Shown one piece after another: positions 3,745 through 51,670 of a DNA stretch of 64,000 bases (the stretch's first letter is position 1; each line of letters begins with the position of its first letter). The translations under genes and the position numbers were made by a program. Source of the DNA: Podarcis tiliguerta. Lineage: Eukaryota. The notes under the pieces are model-generated. The model searched no databases. It had not been told where the DNA came from and worked only from the letters and a program-made list of their open reading frames with translations. The DNA lies in NCBI GenBank assembly GCA_965153285.1, contig OZ229113.1; one strand, written 5' to 3'.

Positions 3745-3879
3745 GAGGTATGGGCATGTTGGCGTGAATTATTGTTATACTTGGATGTTGAAAACAAATG
3801 GTTGAATGAGGTAGAATCAAAACTCAGGGCAACAGAAAATATTCAAGAAGGCACAGAAGAGATCTCAGAAGCACTAGAT
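3745..3879 (+). CDS. DMD: Dystrophin exon 28 equivalent
   Basis: catcag|GAG...GAT|gtaagt; 135 bp; EVWACWRELLLYLDVENKWLNEVE...EISEALD. Confidence 0.97.
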
Positions 3880-4798: not shown

Positions 4799-4948
4799 TC
4801 TCTGGGTACATTAATGCAACACCCAGAAGATAACCGCAATCAGATTCGTGAGTTGGCACAGACCTTAACTGATGGTGGAGTTCTGGATGAACTGATCAAT
4901 GAAAAACTGGAGAAGTTCAATACTCGGTGGGAAGAGCTACAACAAGAG
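4799..4948 (+). CDS. DMD: Dystrophin exon 29 equivalent
   Basis: tttcag|TCT...GAG|gtacat; 150 bp; [50 protein letters not shown] (absent from the ORF track). Confidence 0.96.
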
Positions 4949-5224
4949 GTACATTTTAAGAAATAATTTCCTTCCCCCATACTTTTCTCTTAAACACTGT
5001 GTTTAACAGGAGAGCTGAAAGGTAAAGGTACCTGTCTTATAAAATACTGTGTTGTAAAGATGCGGACAACAGTGTTGACGCAAGAAGAAACTAGCAAAAG
5101 TTGTGACAGCTTTGGAAGGGACCGATTAACAGATGCAGCTCTCTGTATATGTTTTTTGTTTCTTTTTATATGTGTATAAGAGGGTCTACCTGGTATCAAT
5201 TTTTCCAGGAAATCTACATACATG

Positions 5225-5337
5225 TCTTCTTATTCTTCTTCGGCGATCACTCATAGCCGAGTAAGATTGTCTTCCATAAAAACGGTTTTAACAATGAGTC
5301 CGTAAGTGACTGTGAAGGCCAATTCTGGACCCACACG
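5225..5337 (-). mobile_element. Short LINE 3' end, probably RTE-type
   Basis: Starts with a (TTC)n-like tail (AAG repeats on the minus strand), followed by a repeat-like body; family assigned from memory. Confidence 0.45.
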
Positions 5338-7789
5338 CAAAGCTCTCAAGTAGGCAAGAAAGACACTTTTTAGTTTAAGAGTGAATGGTCAGTTCCTTTA
5401 AATTTGGCAGCCCCGTTTCATGATGGAAGACGGGGCAGAATGGAAGTAGAGCATAGCTTAGATGTAAACCTGATGTACCCCCAAGTGGCAGGGGTGGCTG
5501 GTCCCATTTTGGCACCTGTGCTGAAACAGGAATTGCCACATCCTGCCTCCCCCCACCCACGCCACCATTTCTGCCACTGGGGTATTCCGCAATGCATAGG
5601 TGCTTCGCTTCTCTGCCTGGGGACGGGTAAGATGCGTGGCAGTGCTACATGCTAGAATGCCTCCCTCTTGTCTGTGAGAGGGAAGGCCTTCAGCTGGCAG
5701 CAGGAGCAGTGGGAGGACAGAGCTCCGCCTCTTGCACTCCTGCCTCCTTAAGGTGGGTGCTTCACCCTGCCTCATGGGCATGCCAACTCTGCCCCATAGG
5801 ACTTTATATAATTTAAATGGGCCTTAAAGACTCAATCTGTGTTGTATAAATAATGCTGTATATATATAGGTGTACATTGCTTTGTAAACCATGTTGGGAT
5901 GAATATATCTTGAAAAGTCTGTAAGTTCATTAAATTAAATAAATGGAAATAAATTCAGTAAATAGAAAACAAAAGAAATGGAGCATTCACATGAAAACAA
6001 ATGGAAAAACAATTTTCCCTTGTGAACCTCACTTTAGAAGGCAGCAAAATTTATTTGGAATAAAAACAAAACAAAAGAGGAATCCTAAAACCCAATGCAC
6101 TATAAGATGTCTAATAAAATAAATCAGCAGTTTAAGAACACTTGGAGTGCAAAATCAGCACAGACTAAGAAAAAACAACACTTTCTTAGCTAGCATTTCC
6201 ATATACCTGCTTACTGCCCTTGACTGCCCCCTCCCCCCCTGCCCAAGGAAATATTGTCTGCACACAGCACCGCTGTAAAGGTAGGCAACAGCAAACAAGG
6301 GGATAGCAGAAGGGGGGGGGGGGAGAGAAAGCATGGGATAGAAAGTGTTTTATACCCATTTTCTGCCCAACCAACCAGGTTTCACAGGAAGCAATCATGC
6401 AATAGTTCTTTGACAACCCGAGCTGTTAATTGTTATGTTCAAGGGGTGGGGGTCGGAATGTAAGGAGGCTGACCTCAATGGTAGTGAATGTGGAAAGATA
6501 AATATTTGTAATTTTCAGGCAGGTCACAGAAGACTTAAATGAGAACATCAGATTCCCAAGAGCCAGAGCACCAAGTTTAATTTACTAATCTTCCCCCTTA
6601 TTTTTGAACATCCAAATCCCTCCAGTTCCACATAACCCTCCTAACAATCAATTAGCATAACACAGGACATTGATAAACCCTCATCACAATTCTTACCCCC
6701 AAAGGCGCTCCTCTCTGATGCCAGCCAACAATCCACATGGTCACTCTCTGGGTTAATTAGCATTAACAAAAGAGCTGGCCAGCTCCTGACACTTGTGCGA
6801 CTGCTGCATGCTTCTGTGACCAGTGTGTTGCCTCATTGTGGATAAAGCTGGCAGGAGGAATCAAAAACACTGGTAATTAAACATTTTCCCTTTGAAAAAC
6901 ACCCTCATTATTATAGCACCCTCATTAAAATGTAAAATGATATATATTTTTTCATTGAGTCATATATCCTTTTTCTGTGGTTTATTGATTGGAAGGTTTC
7001 AAATAAGCTAGATGGGTTTTCTAAAAGCATTATTAGTACCATATACAGTGTGCATGTATGACAGAACATTTGAAGTGGCTGAGGTAATCCTGTCCTGTGT
7101 CCCAGAATATAAAAAAGATATAAAAGTGAGCTTTCATAATACCATTACCACCGAAATCCATGTTTGTTTTACAAAGCGCACAGCAATTTGTTCCTATTTG
7201 TGTGAAGACTACATTCCATTATGAACCGTCACAGGAAAAGAAATAACGAAGGACGTTCAGCTGTTCCCTGTTGGTGAATGCTTTTATAAAATAGTTTTTT
7301 TCATAACATTACTTTCGAGTCCTTGACCTCAAGGTTACACTTCATATGGCCTTGGAAATATAACTGGTAACTCTGATGTGTAGTGTGACTTGACCTCCAG
7401 GTTTATTGAGTGAATAGAAATGTTAGGTTTATAGCCTATTAAAAGAATGAATAATGCAGAGTCAATGCAGATAAAACTAAATTATGAGAAGGCAGAATAT
7501 GAAAGAAGGTGAAAAACTAAGCTGAAAATCGCATGTGTCATCATCTTAAACTATTAAGTATGAAAAGAGGGGCAAAGGGAAATGTAAAACCAAAGAAGGT
7601 CTTAGTAACCATATTGTGGGGTTTCGCTAATGTCATAGGGCAGGCTTAAAGTAATGTGACTTGCTATAGTAGTAATAGGAACAGTCTGACTCTTTCTTTC
7701 CCCAGTTTTTGTAACATTTTGCTGAATGCGGTACCATTAAGAAATATTGTAATAAGGTGAGTGAACCATAAAGAGTCAAGAAAAAACTT

Positions 7790-8144
7790 AAGAGTACTAA
7801 TCATTTCTGGGAGTACTACCATTTAATCCAGGCTCTAAGAAACTATTTATATCCTATGTGAGAGTTTGTTTTATAAACAGCACTTTCATCCCTCTCACTT
7901 GTTGCAGTGGATTATCTGTAAGTGGACTATGATGACGGCAACTTTGTTCTGAGCAAAGGAAATCTCCTGACATATATAATGAGATCAGGAGCTTCCTGAG
8001 GCTTCAGAATGAACAAAACTATCTAATGGCAGGACTTAGTTTTGCAGTCTTCTACTCACTATAGAATTCCTCACTATTTGGTTTGGTTATTTAGGGAATT
8101 TTAGGGAAGTTTGACTTTTTGTGGTTATTTATTTAAAAAACAAA
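7790..8144 (+). promoter_or_regulatory. Putative Dp260 internal promoter / 5'UTR region
   Basis: Lies directly upstream of the Dp260-like ATG; TAATCC at 7824-7829, GGATTA at 7909-7914 and CTAATC near 7797 (K50 homeodomain CRX/OTX2-type sites); boundaries approximate. Confidence 0.5.
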
Positions 8145-8183
8145 ATGGCTGGCAAAAAAAGACGAAATTTATCTTACAAAAAG
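8145..8183 (+). CDS. DMD: Coding part of a putative alternative first exon of the retinal dystrophin isoform (Dp260-like)
   Basis: caaaATGG (strong Kozak) then MAGKKRRNLSYKK and AAG|gtggtt donor, phase 0; a 91-bp intron joins it in frame to exon 30; resembles the human Dp260 N-terminus MSARKLRNLSYKK as recalled. Confidence 0.85.
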
Positions 8184-8274
8184 GTGGTTGTGTATCAGTA
8201 TGAAATTCCTGTGTGTTTTTAACAGCATTAAAGAAAAATTGAATGGCTAATACTCTTTTTCCTTTATTTTTCAG

Positions 8275-8436
8275 GCTGTGAGGAGACAAAAGGTTCTTGA
8301 ACAAAGTATCCACTCTGCACAAGAGATTGACAAAACCCTTCAGTTAATTCAAGAGTCTCTTGCTTTCATTGATCGACAGTTAACTGGTTATATTGCCGAC
8401 AGAATTGATGCAGCACAAGTACCTCAAGAAGCACAG
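8275..8436 (+). CDS. DMD: Dystrophin exon 30 equivalent
   Basis: ttttcag|GCT...CAG|gtgagt; 162 bp; AVRRQKVLEQSIHSAQE...QVPQEAQ. Confidence 0.97.
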
Positions 8437-11400
8437 GTGAGTCTTGTGGACTTTAGTTTAAATAGCTTTATCATTCAAGTGGTCAGTATGATTCCTTTAA
8501 TTTGGTTGGCTTTTTCCTCAAAAATGACGATTTCTAGAATTTTCAGCAGCTGGGGTTAGGAAGCATAATTTGCAACCCATTTCTTGCAAAACTACTTAGT
8601 GGACTACAGATGTGTATTTTGCAGCAAATTCATGTTTTTAGATTTATTTTATCTGTCCTTATGCTGACACAAAATTATTATATGACACTAATATAAACTC
8701 ATTAAATGTTTGTGAAGGTTGTGCTATAACCTTGAAGCAACAGCATGAATACTATAACTCCCTATAGTGCTATTTTTATCATGCCATAAATGACTCATCA
8801 TCTTTACTACTTTTAGTTAACCTCTTAGTAAAGCAGATTAGATATCCCATATATAGTTATTGAGTTATGCAATCATTGATACTGGATAGTTACATGCTTG
8901 TACAATCCTATATAGTCTACTCAGAAGTAAGCCCCATTGAATTCAGTGGGATTAACTCCCAGGAAACTGTATAGGATTGGAGCCATAATCTCATATAAAA
9001 TGAAATAAATTAAAGAATATTGCCACATCCTTCATTCCTTAACTTTGTGTCTGTCAATATTTGCTTCACATTTTAAGAACATTTCTGAAGTACCGTACGT
9101 AACTTTCATTAATTGTATTTGTAAGAAAGGATACATTAGCCAAAATGAAACACAGATTTCTGGAATTGGGTGGAATATATTAGAAGAATTTTAAGATTAA
9201 TGCACAGTTTATATTTTGAATTAAAAAAACCCTTCCCTTATGTGAAAATGGTGGCTTTCAGACATCAATAATGATTGTACTGCAAAACATAATTTGTTGT
9301 GATTTTCAAGGAAGTCTTATAAGGACTTTGATAAACAGATATGGCAAAGATAATAAATATGGTTCTAGCTCAATCCCATTTTTGACTTGGGAGGCAGGTA
9401 TGTTATAAGATTAGTTTATATTTAATGCAGCAGTTATTTTCTGAAACAACTATATTCTTCACTTTAAAATAATAATCTCCTAAGGATGCATCAATTTGAA
9501 CAAGTCCCTAATATTCCCTGGGTTCCATAACCTCTATGCTAATGAAATAAAATATATTGCTAACTTGAAATCAAGATGACATGGAAGGCAATGGATATGA
9601 CAGGCATGAAGATAGAACCTTAGGTTTGATTTAATAACTAGTTAACTATTGGGAAAATACAAATCTGCCATGTACCAAGACAGCTTAGCTCAACATTGTC
9701 TGCACTGACTGGCAATACAACCATCTTTACCACCTTTTTGCCTGCAATGCATGTGCTCTACCTGGACCGTACTCTAAATAAAAAAAAAAAAATCAATTAA
9801 CTTTATATACATTAATTGGTGAACCATTTTCAATAGGCTTGTGTCCTTTCCCCCTGGAAGCATAATGTCAAATTTTGTTAATTCTCTTTACATGTTGTAA
9901 ATGCATTACAGCCACAATAGCAATAAAGTAGTGCCTCTCTGTCTCCTCTTCTCTATAGCATGTTAGATAGTTTGCATCTTTCCTTATCAGCAGCCTTATT
10001 ATGCATACATAAAATATTCTAATGGGTGGGTTATTCCATACCATTTGTGGGCTTGTTTTATCCATCTCTGATAAACCAACTGTGCTTGTGTTTCATCACA
10101 ATAGCTAGACTTGTCCAATTTATTTTATATTGAACATACATGAAAAGATGTGTGTGTACTAATAATTCATATGCATCTGATTAACTGACTGATTGGAAAC
10201 TTAATAATACTTTATTATACAATGTCAAGTATGAATTGTCAACCGGCAATCACATGGGCTAAATCTGCCTCCTGAAGTGTGCACCCCCCCTCTTTCCATT
10301 ACAAACCCTGTTAATTTCTCCTAGGGTTGATTAAAAGGGTGCGAGGAGGAGACTTTTCCTCCTCCTACTTTTCTAACCCCATACCCACCCCTTTTATCTT
10401 CTATTTCCCATTTTGGTAATGGACAAGAGTGAAAGCAGAGGAAGAGTCACATAGAGGCTTTATTTCACTATATTCCACCCCTTTTAAGCATGTTGAGTAG
10501 AAGACCAAGGAGAATTTATCTATGTGTCTATATGCCAGAATGTGTCCACCTAGACAATAGATCTCTAGATTGTTAATGCTGCACCTTCAGGCGAGGCAAC
10601 CTGTTTTAAATGAGACACCAGGCGCATGGAGCACTGCATGGGTTGGTTTTTCTTACATGCCCAGCTTCATGTTTTAATCAAACCTTTGACTCTACCCTGC
10701 CCCATCACTCCAAGATCAAGGTGGAGAAGAAAGGGACATGCAAAAGAGACTGTTGTCTTCTATGTGAACTCCTTGGTGTATCTGTCCTCTCTTTCCATAA
10801 ATATCTCAATAAATAATGTTGGGCAGAGTGTGCTCCAAGATTGGGAGTGTCCCCATGTGCTTGTCAGACTCCTCTCTGCATTCATGTTAACTGCTGGTGG
10901 ATAAAGTCGCCTACATAGTAAATGAGAGTATGAGGAAAAAGCCAAATTGCATACAGTTTCTTGCTTTTACCACATCTGTTCATTTTCAGTTAACAAAAAT
11001 ACTATTTGTAACATTAATGGAATTACAGACTTTATGTTCTTGGACAGAAGATATATCCAGCTTTAGCCTTGTACTTCTAGGGAATAGAGAGAGAGTGAAT
11101 TGCTGAATTGATTAAAATGTGGTCTAGATAAAACCTTCTGACAGATTTTCCTCCCACATTTTGCAGTAATGGTTCCTAATATTCATCTTGATGAGAAAGA
11201 AAGCTGCCAGATATTTCCTGGTATAGCTGTTCTCTCTGGTAATTGTTTAGCAGTTCATCCACTAGCAGATATTCATTTCCAACAATTTCCTCATAAATTG
11301 GTTTGAATTGGTCTAAATTAGCTCATCTCAGTGTGTAGGATATGAATTGTTTTGTGTGACATTGCATTGGTCAGTATTGTGCAAGACATTTGGTTTCTTA

Positions 11401-11941: not shown

Positions 11942-12052
11942 AAAATTCAATCAGAGTTGACAAGCCATGAGATTAGTTTGGATGAAATGAAAAAACGGAA
12001 CCGGGGTAAGGATGCCACCAAAAGGATATTCTCCCAAATCGATACTGCACAG
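11942..12052 (+). CDS. DMD: Dystrophin exon 31 equivalent
   Basis: aaacag|AAA...CAG|gtttgt; 111 bp; KIQSELTSHEISLDEMKKRNRGKDATKRIFSQIDTAQ. Confidence 0.96.
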
Positions 12053-13718: not shown

Positions 13719-13892
13719 AAAAAGCTACAAGATGTCTTCATGAAGTTTCGCTTGTTCCAAAAGCCAGCCAATTTTGAGCAGCGCTTACAGGAATGTAAAA
13801 TAATTTTAGATGAAGTGAAATCGCAAGTGCCGAAGTTGGAGTTGAGGAGTGTCGAGCAGGAAGCAGTGCAATCCCAGCTTGATCACTGTATG
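13719..13892 (+). CDS. DMD: Dystrophin exon 32 equivalent
   Basis: ttttcag|AAA...ATG|gtgagt; 174 bp; KKLQDVFMKFRLFQKPANFEQRLQEC...QLDHCM. Confidence 0.97.
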
Positions 13893-22943: not shown

Positions 22944-24449
22944 GTAAGAAATACATATTGTTACTTTCTGTTTCCAGAAATAGCACTACATAGCTTGTTT
23001 GGGAAGCAAGAAGAGCAATGGAGATTTAGGATGTCTTTGGAATATCTATTTTATTTACACATATATGTAGGTGGAGCATAATGGAAGTAAACAAATTCCT
23101 TTATCAGGCAGCAAAATGGCTAATCCTCCATAACATCATAACAGCTTTTTTACAGTCCAGCTATATTCCCAACATTCTACCTTCCTATCCACATTCAAAC
23201 TGCAATTACTTCTAGCTGGGTATCTATCCTTCCGCTCAAAAATCTGATGGTTGATAAGAGATTACCAGTAATTAAATGACATTATCGGTTTTTTGTCACC
23301 ACCCATTAGTTTACCAGGAAAAAGCATACAGTGCTAACGCTGATCAAGACAACCATGCAAAATAAGAAAGGCATTTGTTTTCTGTCGTCTATAAACATTG
23401 TTACAACTGAACTATGCATGTATAGTATATATCATTTTTTTAAAAAAAAAATTATTGTAAATGCTATGTTTGTATACACACAGAGAAGTTAGGCTTTAGG
23501 CCCTGTTACTTCACCCTTCATAAAATGTAGCTGTTACTGCCATTAGCAGAGGTGGCCACACGATGAATCATATCATGCAAGAATTCTCTGCAGATTGAGT
23601 TTCACTCATGCCTGGAAATAACTGGAATTGTGAGTTTGCAGGGGCATGCTAAAACTTAGTATGCACAGAATAACAGTTTTTACTTGTAATTGCAGCAGCT
23701 GACACTATTACTGCGAGCCATTAGTGCCCAGAAGGTTAAAGATACAGCAACTTGCCTAAGCCCACTCAGTAAATTCATGGCTGAGCTGGGATTTGAACTT
23801 TCCTGTTCATTTTTTTAAAATCACTACCATTATGGCCAAAATTTTGTTGGCTCTTTGAAATACCAGCTTTGATAGACCTATTGCTGACTGAGTCCCATAT
23901 ATCTGTCTTATCACAATTTGTAAAATGCGACTGTAAACAATTTGGGGGGAAAGGTGGTAATTGTGCCAGTTAAATAATACAACAATGCAATGTTTGGAAA
24001 TTGCTGCTATCGCTATAACAGCAGTTCAATAATATGGCCAACTTCATTTAGCATATGTTCAGTCTACTTGACAGCAGATGTTTGCTCCTTATAGCTGCAT
24101 CATTCTGTTTCAACTGTAATAACAATCATATTACAGACAAAGATAAAAGGTTTTGATAATGTTCTGTTATGATTCCAAAAGGTGTGTTTCTCATGCATTA
24201 TTTATAAACATGATGAAGCCTGCACATTATGCACATTGGCTGTCTCAATCTGAAAATAAAATCTGAAAGTAAAATATTGATTTTAAAAAAATCAATGTGG
24301 CTATATATTTGTCTCATTTCCACCACTAGAATAAAGGAGATAAATAAGAAAAGCTGTATTTTCTTGTAACCACCAACAGGCATTTTTCTCTTACATCAGT
24401 TCTAAAACGTCAGTTCCAGAAGAGTAACAACATTGGCCATACTCTGAAA

Positions 24450-25452
24450 CAGAGCTGTCTTTCCCATAGAGCTTAGTGGCGCGTTGCGCCACAGTGCTGC
24501 CCTCTCAGGGACGCCCCAGCAAGTGGGAGAGCTGTGCGGCTTTGCCGGCGGCCTCCCCTTTCCCTGCATGCCCTGGTGTGCAGATTGCCTCCCAAGCCTC
24601 CTGTGCATGGCGGGAGCGCAGGAGGGGAGTCCGGAAGGCATGTGGGAATGGTTTTGACGGGGAAGCTGGAGCCTCTCCCAGCAGCTCCCTGTCAAAGCTC
24701 TCCACCAGTGGCTTCCCAGCGGGCAGAAGGGAACTCCAAAGCATTGCAAAGATTCTCCTTCTCCTCACCCAGGAGCAGAATGAGCTGCTTTGGCTGCTGC
24801 CACTGCGACTCAGTCCATGCTCTTTTCTGGAGACCAAGCTGAACTCTGACGGAAAGAATTATTTCATGGGATCTGCCCAAGGCGTTTGGCTCCACCCCCC
24901 TCCCCCAAGCTGTGCCTAAGTGCACTTTATTTCTCCCTTTAAGTAGCATTGCGAAATGCAGCGGGCTGCACACACACACACCGTACGCTGCATGTGTGGT
25001 TGTGGGCGAGGACAATCTGCTGCTGTCCCACTGCACCCACCCACCCACTCACTTCAAGGGGGTCAGAGAATCCTGCATGGGCGGGAGGAGGGACGCTATT
25101 TCTGCCCTGGCTCAGCTTCCCGACCGCCACCCTCCTCTCCTCTCTGTCGGTGGGTTAAATGCCCTCTCCTTCCTGCTTTCCTCTGTCCCACTTTCTCTCT
25201 CTCTTTTTATCCAGTAAAGGAAGGGGTAGTTTCCCCCCACCCCCAGCTCTTACCTCTCCTTCCCTGTAGTGAAATCTTGTGGAATTCCCAAGTTCAGGTC
25301 AACAACTCTGGGGAATCTTTCCTAAAAAAGGTCAACAACTTTGGGGTCCCCCCTTAAAAAGGTCATCAACTCCGGGAAACGGGGGTGTGGGGTGTGGCAG
25401 GCACCGGAGGGATCTTTGCACCACGGCGCCGGATATGCTTAAGACGGCCCTG
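24450..25452. mobile_element. About 1-kb GC-rich non-autonomous hAT element
   Basis: TIR CAGAGCTGTCTTT / AAAGACGGCCCTG (11/13); exact TSD CTCTGAAA at 24442-24449 and 25453-25460; subterminal GGTCA(A/T)CAACT repeats. Confidence 0.88.
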
Positions 25453-26292
25453 CTCTGAAAATGCTTAAGGCTAGGAATGATTTCTAAATGGGCTACTCCT
25501 ACTGGCATGCCAGGATCTGCTGTGCGGCTGCCCTCATATGATGAACCACTGTGCTTTAGGTAGCAGCCTTTGCCAGATGAGCCTTATTTGAGCAACACAG
25601 TCTTCCCGAGCTGTGGCATAGGTCTCATTCACACTTCCACTTGTGCTGTGCCTAGAAAGCATGAGTCCAAGTGGTTTTCTCCTTGCCATGTTCCTTTCCC
25701 AGAGAAAACCTGCTCTTCAGTGCTAAATCAGACAAATGTCAATCGGGGGGAGGGGGGGGGACGGACCCAATTGCTGTTTGTTCTGATTGAGAGTGGTTTT
25801 TCCTAGGGGAAAACAGCAGGACAAGATAAACCCATGCTGTATTTTATCTTTTTCTTCAGTCTTGGCAATAGCAGTTATCAGAACAAACAAATTTTCTATC
25901 TCTTGGTATCATTTTATTCAATTCATCAGTTGTCTGTTCTGATATTGTTACTGTTTTTGATATGAGCATACAGTGCACACACATACACACACACTATAGA
26001 ATGATTCTTTCTTATATGGGAACCAGTGGTTGATTTTTTAATATGTTTTTAAAGTAATTCAGAGAATTACTTTAGGTGCTTTGTGGACACCAAAATAATT
26101 TTTAAAGCTGCCTAAAACATTATCAAATATTGCTTTTGGAACACCTTTCACTTTGCCATACAAGTTGAGAATCTAAAGTCCCCCTGTGCTCATGGAAGCT
26201 GGTTTACAGCTCTGTGAACCTGGGCAATTCTCTTTTCTTTTTGTCTCAGCTACTAATTACTTAATAATATGTTCTATTCCCTTTATATGCAG

Positions 26293-50738: not shown

Positions 50739-51252
50739 CCATGAATTTGGGGCTATATTGATATGTACATAATATTGCTGAGATTTATCTCAGCACTTTG
50801 CAAAGTCTGCTATTTAGGACCTTTCACATTTACTGAGTTCTATAATAAATTCAGAAGAGAGTTTAGTTGATCAGAAAGATGTAATTAAACTTGCACAATG
50901 CACCCCTCTATAGCTTTTATACTGAAAATACCATTCCAATATGTTAGCATCTTAATGCAGACTGTGATAGGCAAAGCTTAAAATACTGGGAATCTGCCTT
51001 GCATAGCACATTCATCCAATTTAAGATGACATGATTTAAGCTAGAACGAGCATATGCTTATTTGGCTATCTGAATCTTCTTGCTTCCATAGAAAGAGTTA
51101 TGTGGGGTCCACCTTGGGATTTTGTAGAATAGTTGCCCTAAGGCTATTGTACTTATTTCAACAACTTAGTCGAGCTTGTTCTCTTAGACAATGGTTTATC
51201 TATTGGGTAGTGGAATGGTGCCAATTTTTGCCCTTTGTTCACCACCATTTTT

Positions 51253-51670
51253 GTATGGAAGTGAGAGCTGGACCATAAAGAAGGCTGATCGCCGAAGAAT
51301 TGATGCTTTTGAATTATGGTGCTGGAGGAGACTATTGAGAGTCCCATGGACTGCAAGAAGATCAAACCTATCCATTTTAAAGGAAATCAACCCTGAGTGC
51401 TCACTGGAAGGGCAGATTGTGAAGCTGAGGCTCCAGTACTTTGGCCACCTCATGAGAAGAGAAGACTCCCTGGAAATGACCCTGATGTTGGGAAAGATTG
51501 AGGGCACAAGAAGAAGGGGACGACAGAGGATGAGATGGTTGGATAGTGTTCTCGAAGCTACCAGCATGAGTTTGACCAAACTGCAGGAGGCAGTGGAAGA
51601 CAGAAGTGCCTGGCGTGCTCTGGTCCATGGGGTCATGAAGAGTCGGACACGAATAAACAACTAAACAACA
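51253..51670 (+). mobile_element. 5'-truncated RTE-BovB LINE
   Basis: Open frame YGSESWTIKKADRRRIDAFELWCWRRLLRVPWTARRSN...WRALVHGVMKSRTR is the BovB ORF C-terminus; (AAC)-rich tail; TSD CACCACCATTTTT / CACCACCCTTTTT. Confidence 0.93.

What the first reader, a model, noticed from the sequence alone, without database searches (positions are those of the whole stretch)
8145..8274. Hidden 13-codon first exon of a reptilian Dp260 (retinal dystrophin) in intron 29
Seen: ATG in strong Kozak context (AAAATGG) encoding MAGKKRRNLSYKK, then a phase-0 GT donor and a 91-bp intron to exon 30. The joined product reads MAGKKRRNLSYKK-AVRRQK. Known: mammalian Dp260 starts in intron 29 with a 13-aa peptide, recalled as MSARKLRNLSYKK, so the last 7 residues would be identical. 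Inference: this internal isoform predates the mammal-reptile split. The exon is too short for the ORF track and is easily missed by annotation. The KKRR run is more basic than the human peptide and resembles an NLS or lipid-binding patch, which is speculation.
Basis: partly seen in the sequence, partly recalled or inferred. Interest (0 to 1): 0.8.

Follow-up and report, generated by a model that had tools for sequence, protein, structure and literature searches.

The report
Lizard Dp260 dystrophin first exon
The short hidden exon is real and is the lizard counterpart of the first exon of the retinal dystrophin Dp260, but a 2007 paper already showed this exon is conserved in all four-limbed vertebrates, so it is an ordinary find.

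Summary
An ATG at 8145 in a strong Kozak context opens 13 codons (MAGKKRRNLSYKK). A GT donor follows at 8184, then a 91-nt intron, and DMD exon 30 runs 8275-8436. RNA contigs of two related lizards join exon 29 (4799-4948) to 8275, which fixes intron 29 and the exon 30 acceptor.

The peptide matches the published Dp260 N-termini: 11/13 with chicken, 9/13 with human and mouse, last seven residues identical. A bird Dp260-type start scanned over all six frames of the window hits only here (11/13; next best 6/13). ATG plus in-frame GT alone is common by chance, so the identity carries the weight.

Jin et al. 2007 (PMC1790709) reported this exon, its flanks and its short intron (101-130 bp) in human, mouse, chicken and frog, and called the Dp260 promoter a tetrapod innovation. 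NCBI's pipeline already models this start in a bird.

Use of the exon in this lizard is not shown. Four RNA runs of unknown tissue and very low depth gave only exon 29-30 joints. The NLS or lipid-patch idea rests on one extra arginine and is untested. Interest is low.

The parts
8145..8183 (+). Coding part of the Dp260-type alternative first exon: 13 codons, MAGKKRRNLSYKK
   Evidence: 11/13 identical to the chicken peptide and to bird P0017. The only such match in the six frames of the window.
8184..8274 (+). Isoform-specific intron of 91 nt. Donor AAG|gtggttgt, CTAAT branch-like site near 8247-8251, pyrimidine tract, acceptor ...tttttcag|GCT
   Evidence: The published size in human to frog is 101-130 bp. 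The donor is inferred by homology; no junction read was seen.
8275..8436 (+). DMD exon 30 (162 nt, 54 codons), shared by the full-length form and Dp260
   Evidence: Exon 29-30 joint in transcript contigs X1 and X14 and in raw reads X23 and X24. 85% identical to a bird protein that NCBI names dystrophin-like.
4799..4948 (+). DMD exon 29 (150 nt). It defines intron 29 as 4949-8274 (3326 nt)
   Evidence: joint skipping 3326 nt, GT..AG.
7950..8144 (+). Presumed 5'UTR and core promoter of the Dp260 transcript. The start site is not mapped. TATATAA at 7973-7979, short upstream ORFs starting at 8009 and 8027, in-frame stop at 8112-8114
   Evidence: Read from the sequence. Length guessed from the human exon R1 of 236 bp with a 197-bp 5'UTR. 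No read covers it.

Best explanation
The segment is the lizard orthologue of exon R1, the alternative first exon of the retinal dystrophin isoform Dp260. By analogy with mammals, a promoter in the last few hundred bases of intron 29 starts a transcript in photoreceptors. Its first exon ends with 13 codons (MAGKKRRNLSYKK) and is spliced across a 91-nt intron, in phase 0, to exon 30. The product is a dystrophin of about 260 kDa that lacks the actin-binding head and the first third of the rod. In mammals this form sits at photoreceptor terminals with dystroglycan. Shown here: the anatomy, the orthology of the peptide, and the position in intron 29. Inferred: the promoter, the start site, use of the donor, and retinal expression in this species.
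For: The anatomy is exactly as described. Exon 29-30 joints in RNA fix intron 29 at 4949-8274 and the acceptor at 8275. Published Dp260 first-exon peptides are human and mouse MSARKLRNLSYKK, chicken MSGKKMRNLSYKK and frog MNSKSHRNSSYKK, all followed by AVRRQK. The published isoform intron is 101-130 bp and the flanks are conserved (PMC1790709). The window peptide is 11/13 identical to chicken and 9/13 to human. The NCBI-predicted bird protein P0017 starts MSGKKMRNLSYKK-AVRRQK. Its first 13 residues find only 8145 in the window, at 11/13, with the next best at 6/13. ATG, frame, length and donor have stayed intact across a split that I recall as roughly 280 million years from birds, which argues for purifying selection.
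Against: No read or contig covers 8145-8183 and none joins 8183 to 8275 in the two raw RNA runs and two transcript assemblies laid. Their tissue is unknown, they come from related species, and exon 30 depth was only about 2-4 reads, so this is weak evidence. The donor AAG|GTGGTT lacks the consensus +4A and +5G. The intron (91 nt) is a little shorter than the published range. No squamate relative could be compared at the DNA level.
Confidence: 0.9

Rival explanations
1. It is a conserved relic. The exon sequence survives, but the Dp260 promoter is no longer used in this lizard lineage, so no such protein is made.
For: No exon-1 reads or junctions in four RNA runs. The donor is somewhat weak.
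Against: ATG, 13-codon frame, RNLSYKK and GT are all intact after very long divergence. The RNA runs were of unknown tissue and very shallow at this gene. Dp260 is retina-restricted in mammals, so absence elsewhere is expected.
Confidence: 0.05
2. The conservation reflects a non-coding role, such as a splicing or enhancer element next to exon 30, and the open frame is incidental.
For: Jin et al. note that the adjacent genomic sequence is conserved too. The layout ATG plus in-frame GT is common by chance.
Against: The frame, the length of exactly 13 codons and the start codon are kept from frog to human. Transcripts with this exon are cloned in human, mouse and Xenopus.
Confidence: 0.03
3. It is a chance open reading frame with no relation to Dp260.
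For: Short ATG-GT frames are common: 80% of shuffles have one.
Against: 11/13 identity at the orthologous position, against a best of 6/13 elsewhere among 127,924 13-mers.
Confidence: 0.01

Closest known systems
Human and mouse Dp260 (R-dystrophin) exon R1 in DMD intron 29 (D'Souza et al. 1995, cited from memory; Kubokawa et al. 2010, PMC3000234)
   Same: [quoted passage not shown] Has 13 unique codons ending RNLSYKK, phase-0 splicing to AVRRQK, and a very short isoform-specific intron.
   Different: Residues 2, 3, 4 and 6 differ (AGK.R against SAR.L). The intron is 91 nt against 101-130 bp. Intron 29 is only 3.3 kb here. The primate cryptic intron in the 5'UTR and the 16-residue variant cannot be assessed, because the lizard 5'UTR is not mapped.
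Chicken Dp260 first exon predicted from the genome (Jin et al. 2007, PMC1790709) and the NCBI model of Apaloderma vittatum (P0017)
   Same: Sauropsid versions with MSGKKMRNLSYKK, 11/13 identical to the lizard peptide and followed by the same exon 30.
   Different: Lizard has A2 for S2 and R6 for M6, giving a KKRR run.
Other internal DMD promoters and first exons (Dp140, Dp116, Dp71)
   Same: The same principle: an intronic promoter with a unique first exon gives an N-terminally shortened dystrophin.
   Different: They sit in other introns (44, 55, 62), outside this window, with other peptides and other tissues.

Membership tests
Dp260 (retinal dystrophin) alternative first exon R1 | The host gene is dystrophin (DMD), not utrophin | tested here: met
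   Exons 30, 31 and 32 of the window are 85%, 81% and 91% identical to P0009, which NCBI names dystrophin-like. Exons 26-29 were recognised by eye from memory of the human protein.
Dp260 (retinal dystrophin) alternative first exon R1 | Lies in intron 29, about 100-130 bp upstream of exon 30 | tested here: met
   Intron 29 is 4949-8274 by RNA joints. The exon ends 91 nt before exon 30. The published range is 101-130 bp, so it is slightly shorter.
Dp260 (retinal dystrophin) alternative first exon R1 | Encodes a 13-residue N-terminus ending R-N-[LS]-S-Y-K-K, in phase 0 with exon 30 | tested here: met
   MAGKKRRNLSYKK is 11/13 to chicken and trogon, 9/13 to human and mouse, and 7/13 to frog by my own count.
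Dp260 (retinal dystrophin) alternative first exon R1 | GT donor directly after codon 13 | tested here: met
   AAG|GTGGTT at 8181-8189. Its use is not shown.
Dp260 (retinal dystrophin) alternative first exon R1 | Transcript that starts in intron 29 and joins exon R1 to exon 30, mainly in retina | tested here: inconclusive
   No such joint in X23, X24, X1 or X14. Only exon 29-30 joints were seen. Tissue is unknown and depth at exon 30 was about 2-4 reads.
Dp260 (retinal dystrophin) alternative first exon R1 | Protein of about 260 kDa at photoreceptor terminals | not testable with these tools
   Needs a western blot or immunostaining of lizard retina.

The most novel reading that the evidence does not exclude
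The lizard-specific change L/M6 to R creates a KKRR run that, together with KK and RRQK just downstream, gives lizard Dp260 a targeting property (nuclear import or acidic-lipid binding) that the bird and mammal forms lack. This might be linked to the cone-dominated retina of diurnal lizards, whereas mouse Dp260 is richer in rods than cones.
Probability: 0.03. Interest if true: 0.3.

Novelty: already known. Interest (0 to 1): 0.1.

Why it matters
It matters little beyond annotation quality. The exon should be included in gene models of squamate DMD so that the Dp260 isoform is represented. It adds one more sauropsid data point to the published conclusion that the Dp260 promoter and first exon arose in an ancestor of tetrapods. 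It also shows that residues 7-13 (RNLSYKK) are the constrained part of the peptide. No open question becomes testable through it.

Tried and rejected
1. RNA support. One search for runs and one laying of reads gave only exon 29-30 joints.

2. Fetching genomic neighbours of exon 30 from other squamates.

3. Searching the open frame around the exon itself. At 35 aa it is under the tool's 40-aa minimum, and it cannot be lengthened without crossing a stop.

4. A profile search with a bird partial dystrophin plus the window's exons 30, 31 and 32 as separate rows. It found one Dp260-type start, bird P0017, and no squamate one in the 83-264 aa range.

5. The large representative search was not run. 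The third word search was left unused as low yield.

7. Promoter clues. There is one CRX/OTX-type site at 7823-7829, but the motif is not enriched (14 seen, 20.8 expected). No paper links CRX to the Dp260 promoter.

8. Pfam on exon 30 and on stray ORFs, and Rfam on the whole window, gave nothing.

9. A few protein hits looked mammalian (for example P0038 and P0052). They were set aside and not compared or searched further.

10. Paper searches for Dp260 in squamates found nothing relevant.

Full report
**What is there.**
- ATG at 8145-8147 sits in aaaATGg, with A at -3 and G at +4.
- Thirteen codons, 8145-8183, read MAGKKRRNLSYKK.
- GT follows at 8184.
- After 91 nt, with a CTAAT branch-like site and a long pyrimidine tract, the acceptor AG at 8273-8274 leads into an exon at 8275-8436. 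That exon reads AVRRQKVLEQSIHSAQEIDKTLQLIQESLAFIDRQLTGYIADRIDAAQVPQEAQ and ends at a CAG|GTGAGT donor.
- An in-frame stop at 8112-8114 makes 8145 the first ATG of its frame.

**The gene and the intron.**
- Stop-to-stop frames on the + strand show the preceding dystrophin exons. I recognised them by eye from memory of the human protein.
  - Exon 26 ends near 1190.
  - Exon 27 is near 2790-2972.
  - Exon 28 is near 3745-3879.
  - Exon 29 is at 4799-4948.
- Later exons are visible in the ORF list.
- A bird protein that NCBI names dystrophin-like (P0009) maps by tblastn to three exons:
  - exon 30, 8275-8436, 85% identity;
  - exon 31, 11942-12052, 81% identity;
  - exon 32, 13719-13892, 91% identity.
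- Transcript contigs of 6,060 and 9,371 nt from two related organisms, and five raw RNA reads, join 4948 to 8275 with GT..AG ends.
- Intron 29 is therefore 4949-8274 (3,326 nt), and the candidate exon lies at its very end.

**Is it more than chance?** The layout alone is not. In shuffles of the 500 nt before exon 30, 80% contain at least one ATG-led frame of five or more codons with an in-frame GT that leaves a 70-300 nt intron. The peptide is another matter. I took the first 13 residues of the bird protein P0017, obtained by a tool, and compared them with all 127,924 13-mers of the six frames of the window. There is one match of 11/13, at 8145 on the + strand. The next best is 6/13.

**What it is.** Jin et al. 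2007 (BMC Genomics 8:19, PMC1790709) give the Dp260 N-termini in Additional File 1A:

| Species | First-exon peptide |
|---|---|
| Human, mouse | MSARKLRNLSYKK |
| Chicken | MSGKKMRNLSYKK |
| Frog | MNSKSHRNSSYKK |
| This window | MAGKKRRNLSYKK |

Each is followed by AVRRQK of exon 30. The lizard peptide is 11/13 identical to chicken and 9/13 to human.

The same paper states four things:
[quoted passage not shown] - Fish lack it.
[quoted passage not shown] A Xenopus transcript was confirmed by RT-PCR.

The human exon R1 is 236 bp, with 13 codons and a 197-bp 5'UTR (PMC3000234). The lizard segment meets every sequence-level criterion of this exon. Its intron, at 91 nt, is slightly below the published range.

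**Is it already annotated in sauropsids?** I ran a profile word search with P0009 plus the window's exons 30, 31 and 32 as separate rows. It returned P0017, 'PREDICTED: dystrophin-like, partial [Apaloderma vittatum]', which starts MSGKKMRNLSYKKAVRRQK. Automated annotation therefore does find this start, at least in a bird. No squamate model with this start appeared in the length range the tool can see (83-264 aa). Full-length Dp260 models, which I estimate at about 2,300 aa, are outside that range, so this says nothing about squamate RefSeq models.

**Is it used in this lizard?** This is not shown.
- The run search listed no run on record as RNA that holds the stretch. I laid two raw RNA-seq runs and two small contig sets, all of other organism labels than the best DNA holder.
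- One low-depth intron piece from organism A differs at 7 of 167 positions, while exon 30 is identical.
- All four runs show the exon 29-30 joint. None shows any read on 8145-8183 or a joint from 8183 to 8275.
- The tissue is unknown, and exon 30 depth in the raw runs was about 2-4 reads.
- In mouse, the Dp260 first exon is detected only in retina samples, mainly in photoreceptors (PMC9896479).
- The second part of that test, conservation in other squamates, could not be run. The 35-aa open frame around the exon is below the search minimum.

**How it most likely works.**
- By analogy with mammals, a promoter in the last few hundred bases of intron 29 fires in photoreceptors.
- The first exon carries a 5'UTR of unknown length and the 13 codons.
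- The 91-nt intron is removed, and translation from 8145 gives a dystrophin that starts in the middle of the rod and keeps the dystroglycan-binding end.
- The donor AAG|GTGGTT has good exon-side bases but lacks +4A and +5G.
- Upstream there is TATATAA at 7973-7979, two short upstream ORFs at 8009 and 8027, and one CRX/OTX-type site at 7823-7829. That motif is not enriched in the window (14 seen, 20.8 expected), and no searchable paper ties CRX to this promoter. These are leads only.

**The basic-patch idea.** The lizard peptide has six basic residues of 13, and chicken and human have five. The difference is one residue (R6 for M or L). KKRR fits the loose monopartite NLS pattern from general knowledge, but nothing here tests it.

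**Verdict.** This is a real, correctly read orthologue of a known exon of a known isoform, and its conservation across tetrapods, including a sauropsid, has been in print since 2007. It is already known, and interest is low. Its value is for gene-model completeness in squamates.

**Housekeeping.**
- A few mammalian-looking protein hits were set aside.
- No exon 1 to exon 30 joined sequence was made.

Noticed in passing
window 5233-5337 and 8915-8963: Short interspersed-repeat pieces inside introns 29 and 30. In the RNA runs and transcript contigs they reach depths 100-1000 times that of the DMD exons, with loose ends on both sides and many variant letters. These are copies sitting in many other transcripts, not local expression.
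   Followed up: partly
window 24000-26000 (ORFs 24402-25357): A GC-rich island (GC 0.48 against 0.32-0.43 elsewhere) with overlapping ORFs of more than 100 aa on both strands, in the intron after the exon at about 22.8 kb. The two ORFs I scanned had no Pfam hit. It could be a CpG island or a GC-rich repeat.
   Followed up: partly
window 51191-51664: A 157-aa ORF with a mirror ORF on the opposite strand. From memory it resembles the C-terminal end of a BovB/RTE-type LINE ORF2, but it has no Pfam hit.
   Followed up: partly
window 1-42500: The DMD gene is very compact here. Exons 26 to about 38/39 fit into about 42 kb, and intron 29 is only 3.3 kb. The Dp260 first exon is kept nonetheless, whereas fish with a 113-bp intron 29 lack it.
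   Followed up: partly
window 4799-4948 and 8275-8436, runs X1 and X14: Transcript contigs from two differently labelled organisms have 0 differences in exon 30 and 3 in exon 29. An intron piece (8448-8614) from one of them has 7 differences in 167. The available RNA therefore comes from related species, not from the sequenced one.
   Followed up: yes
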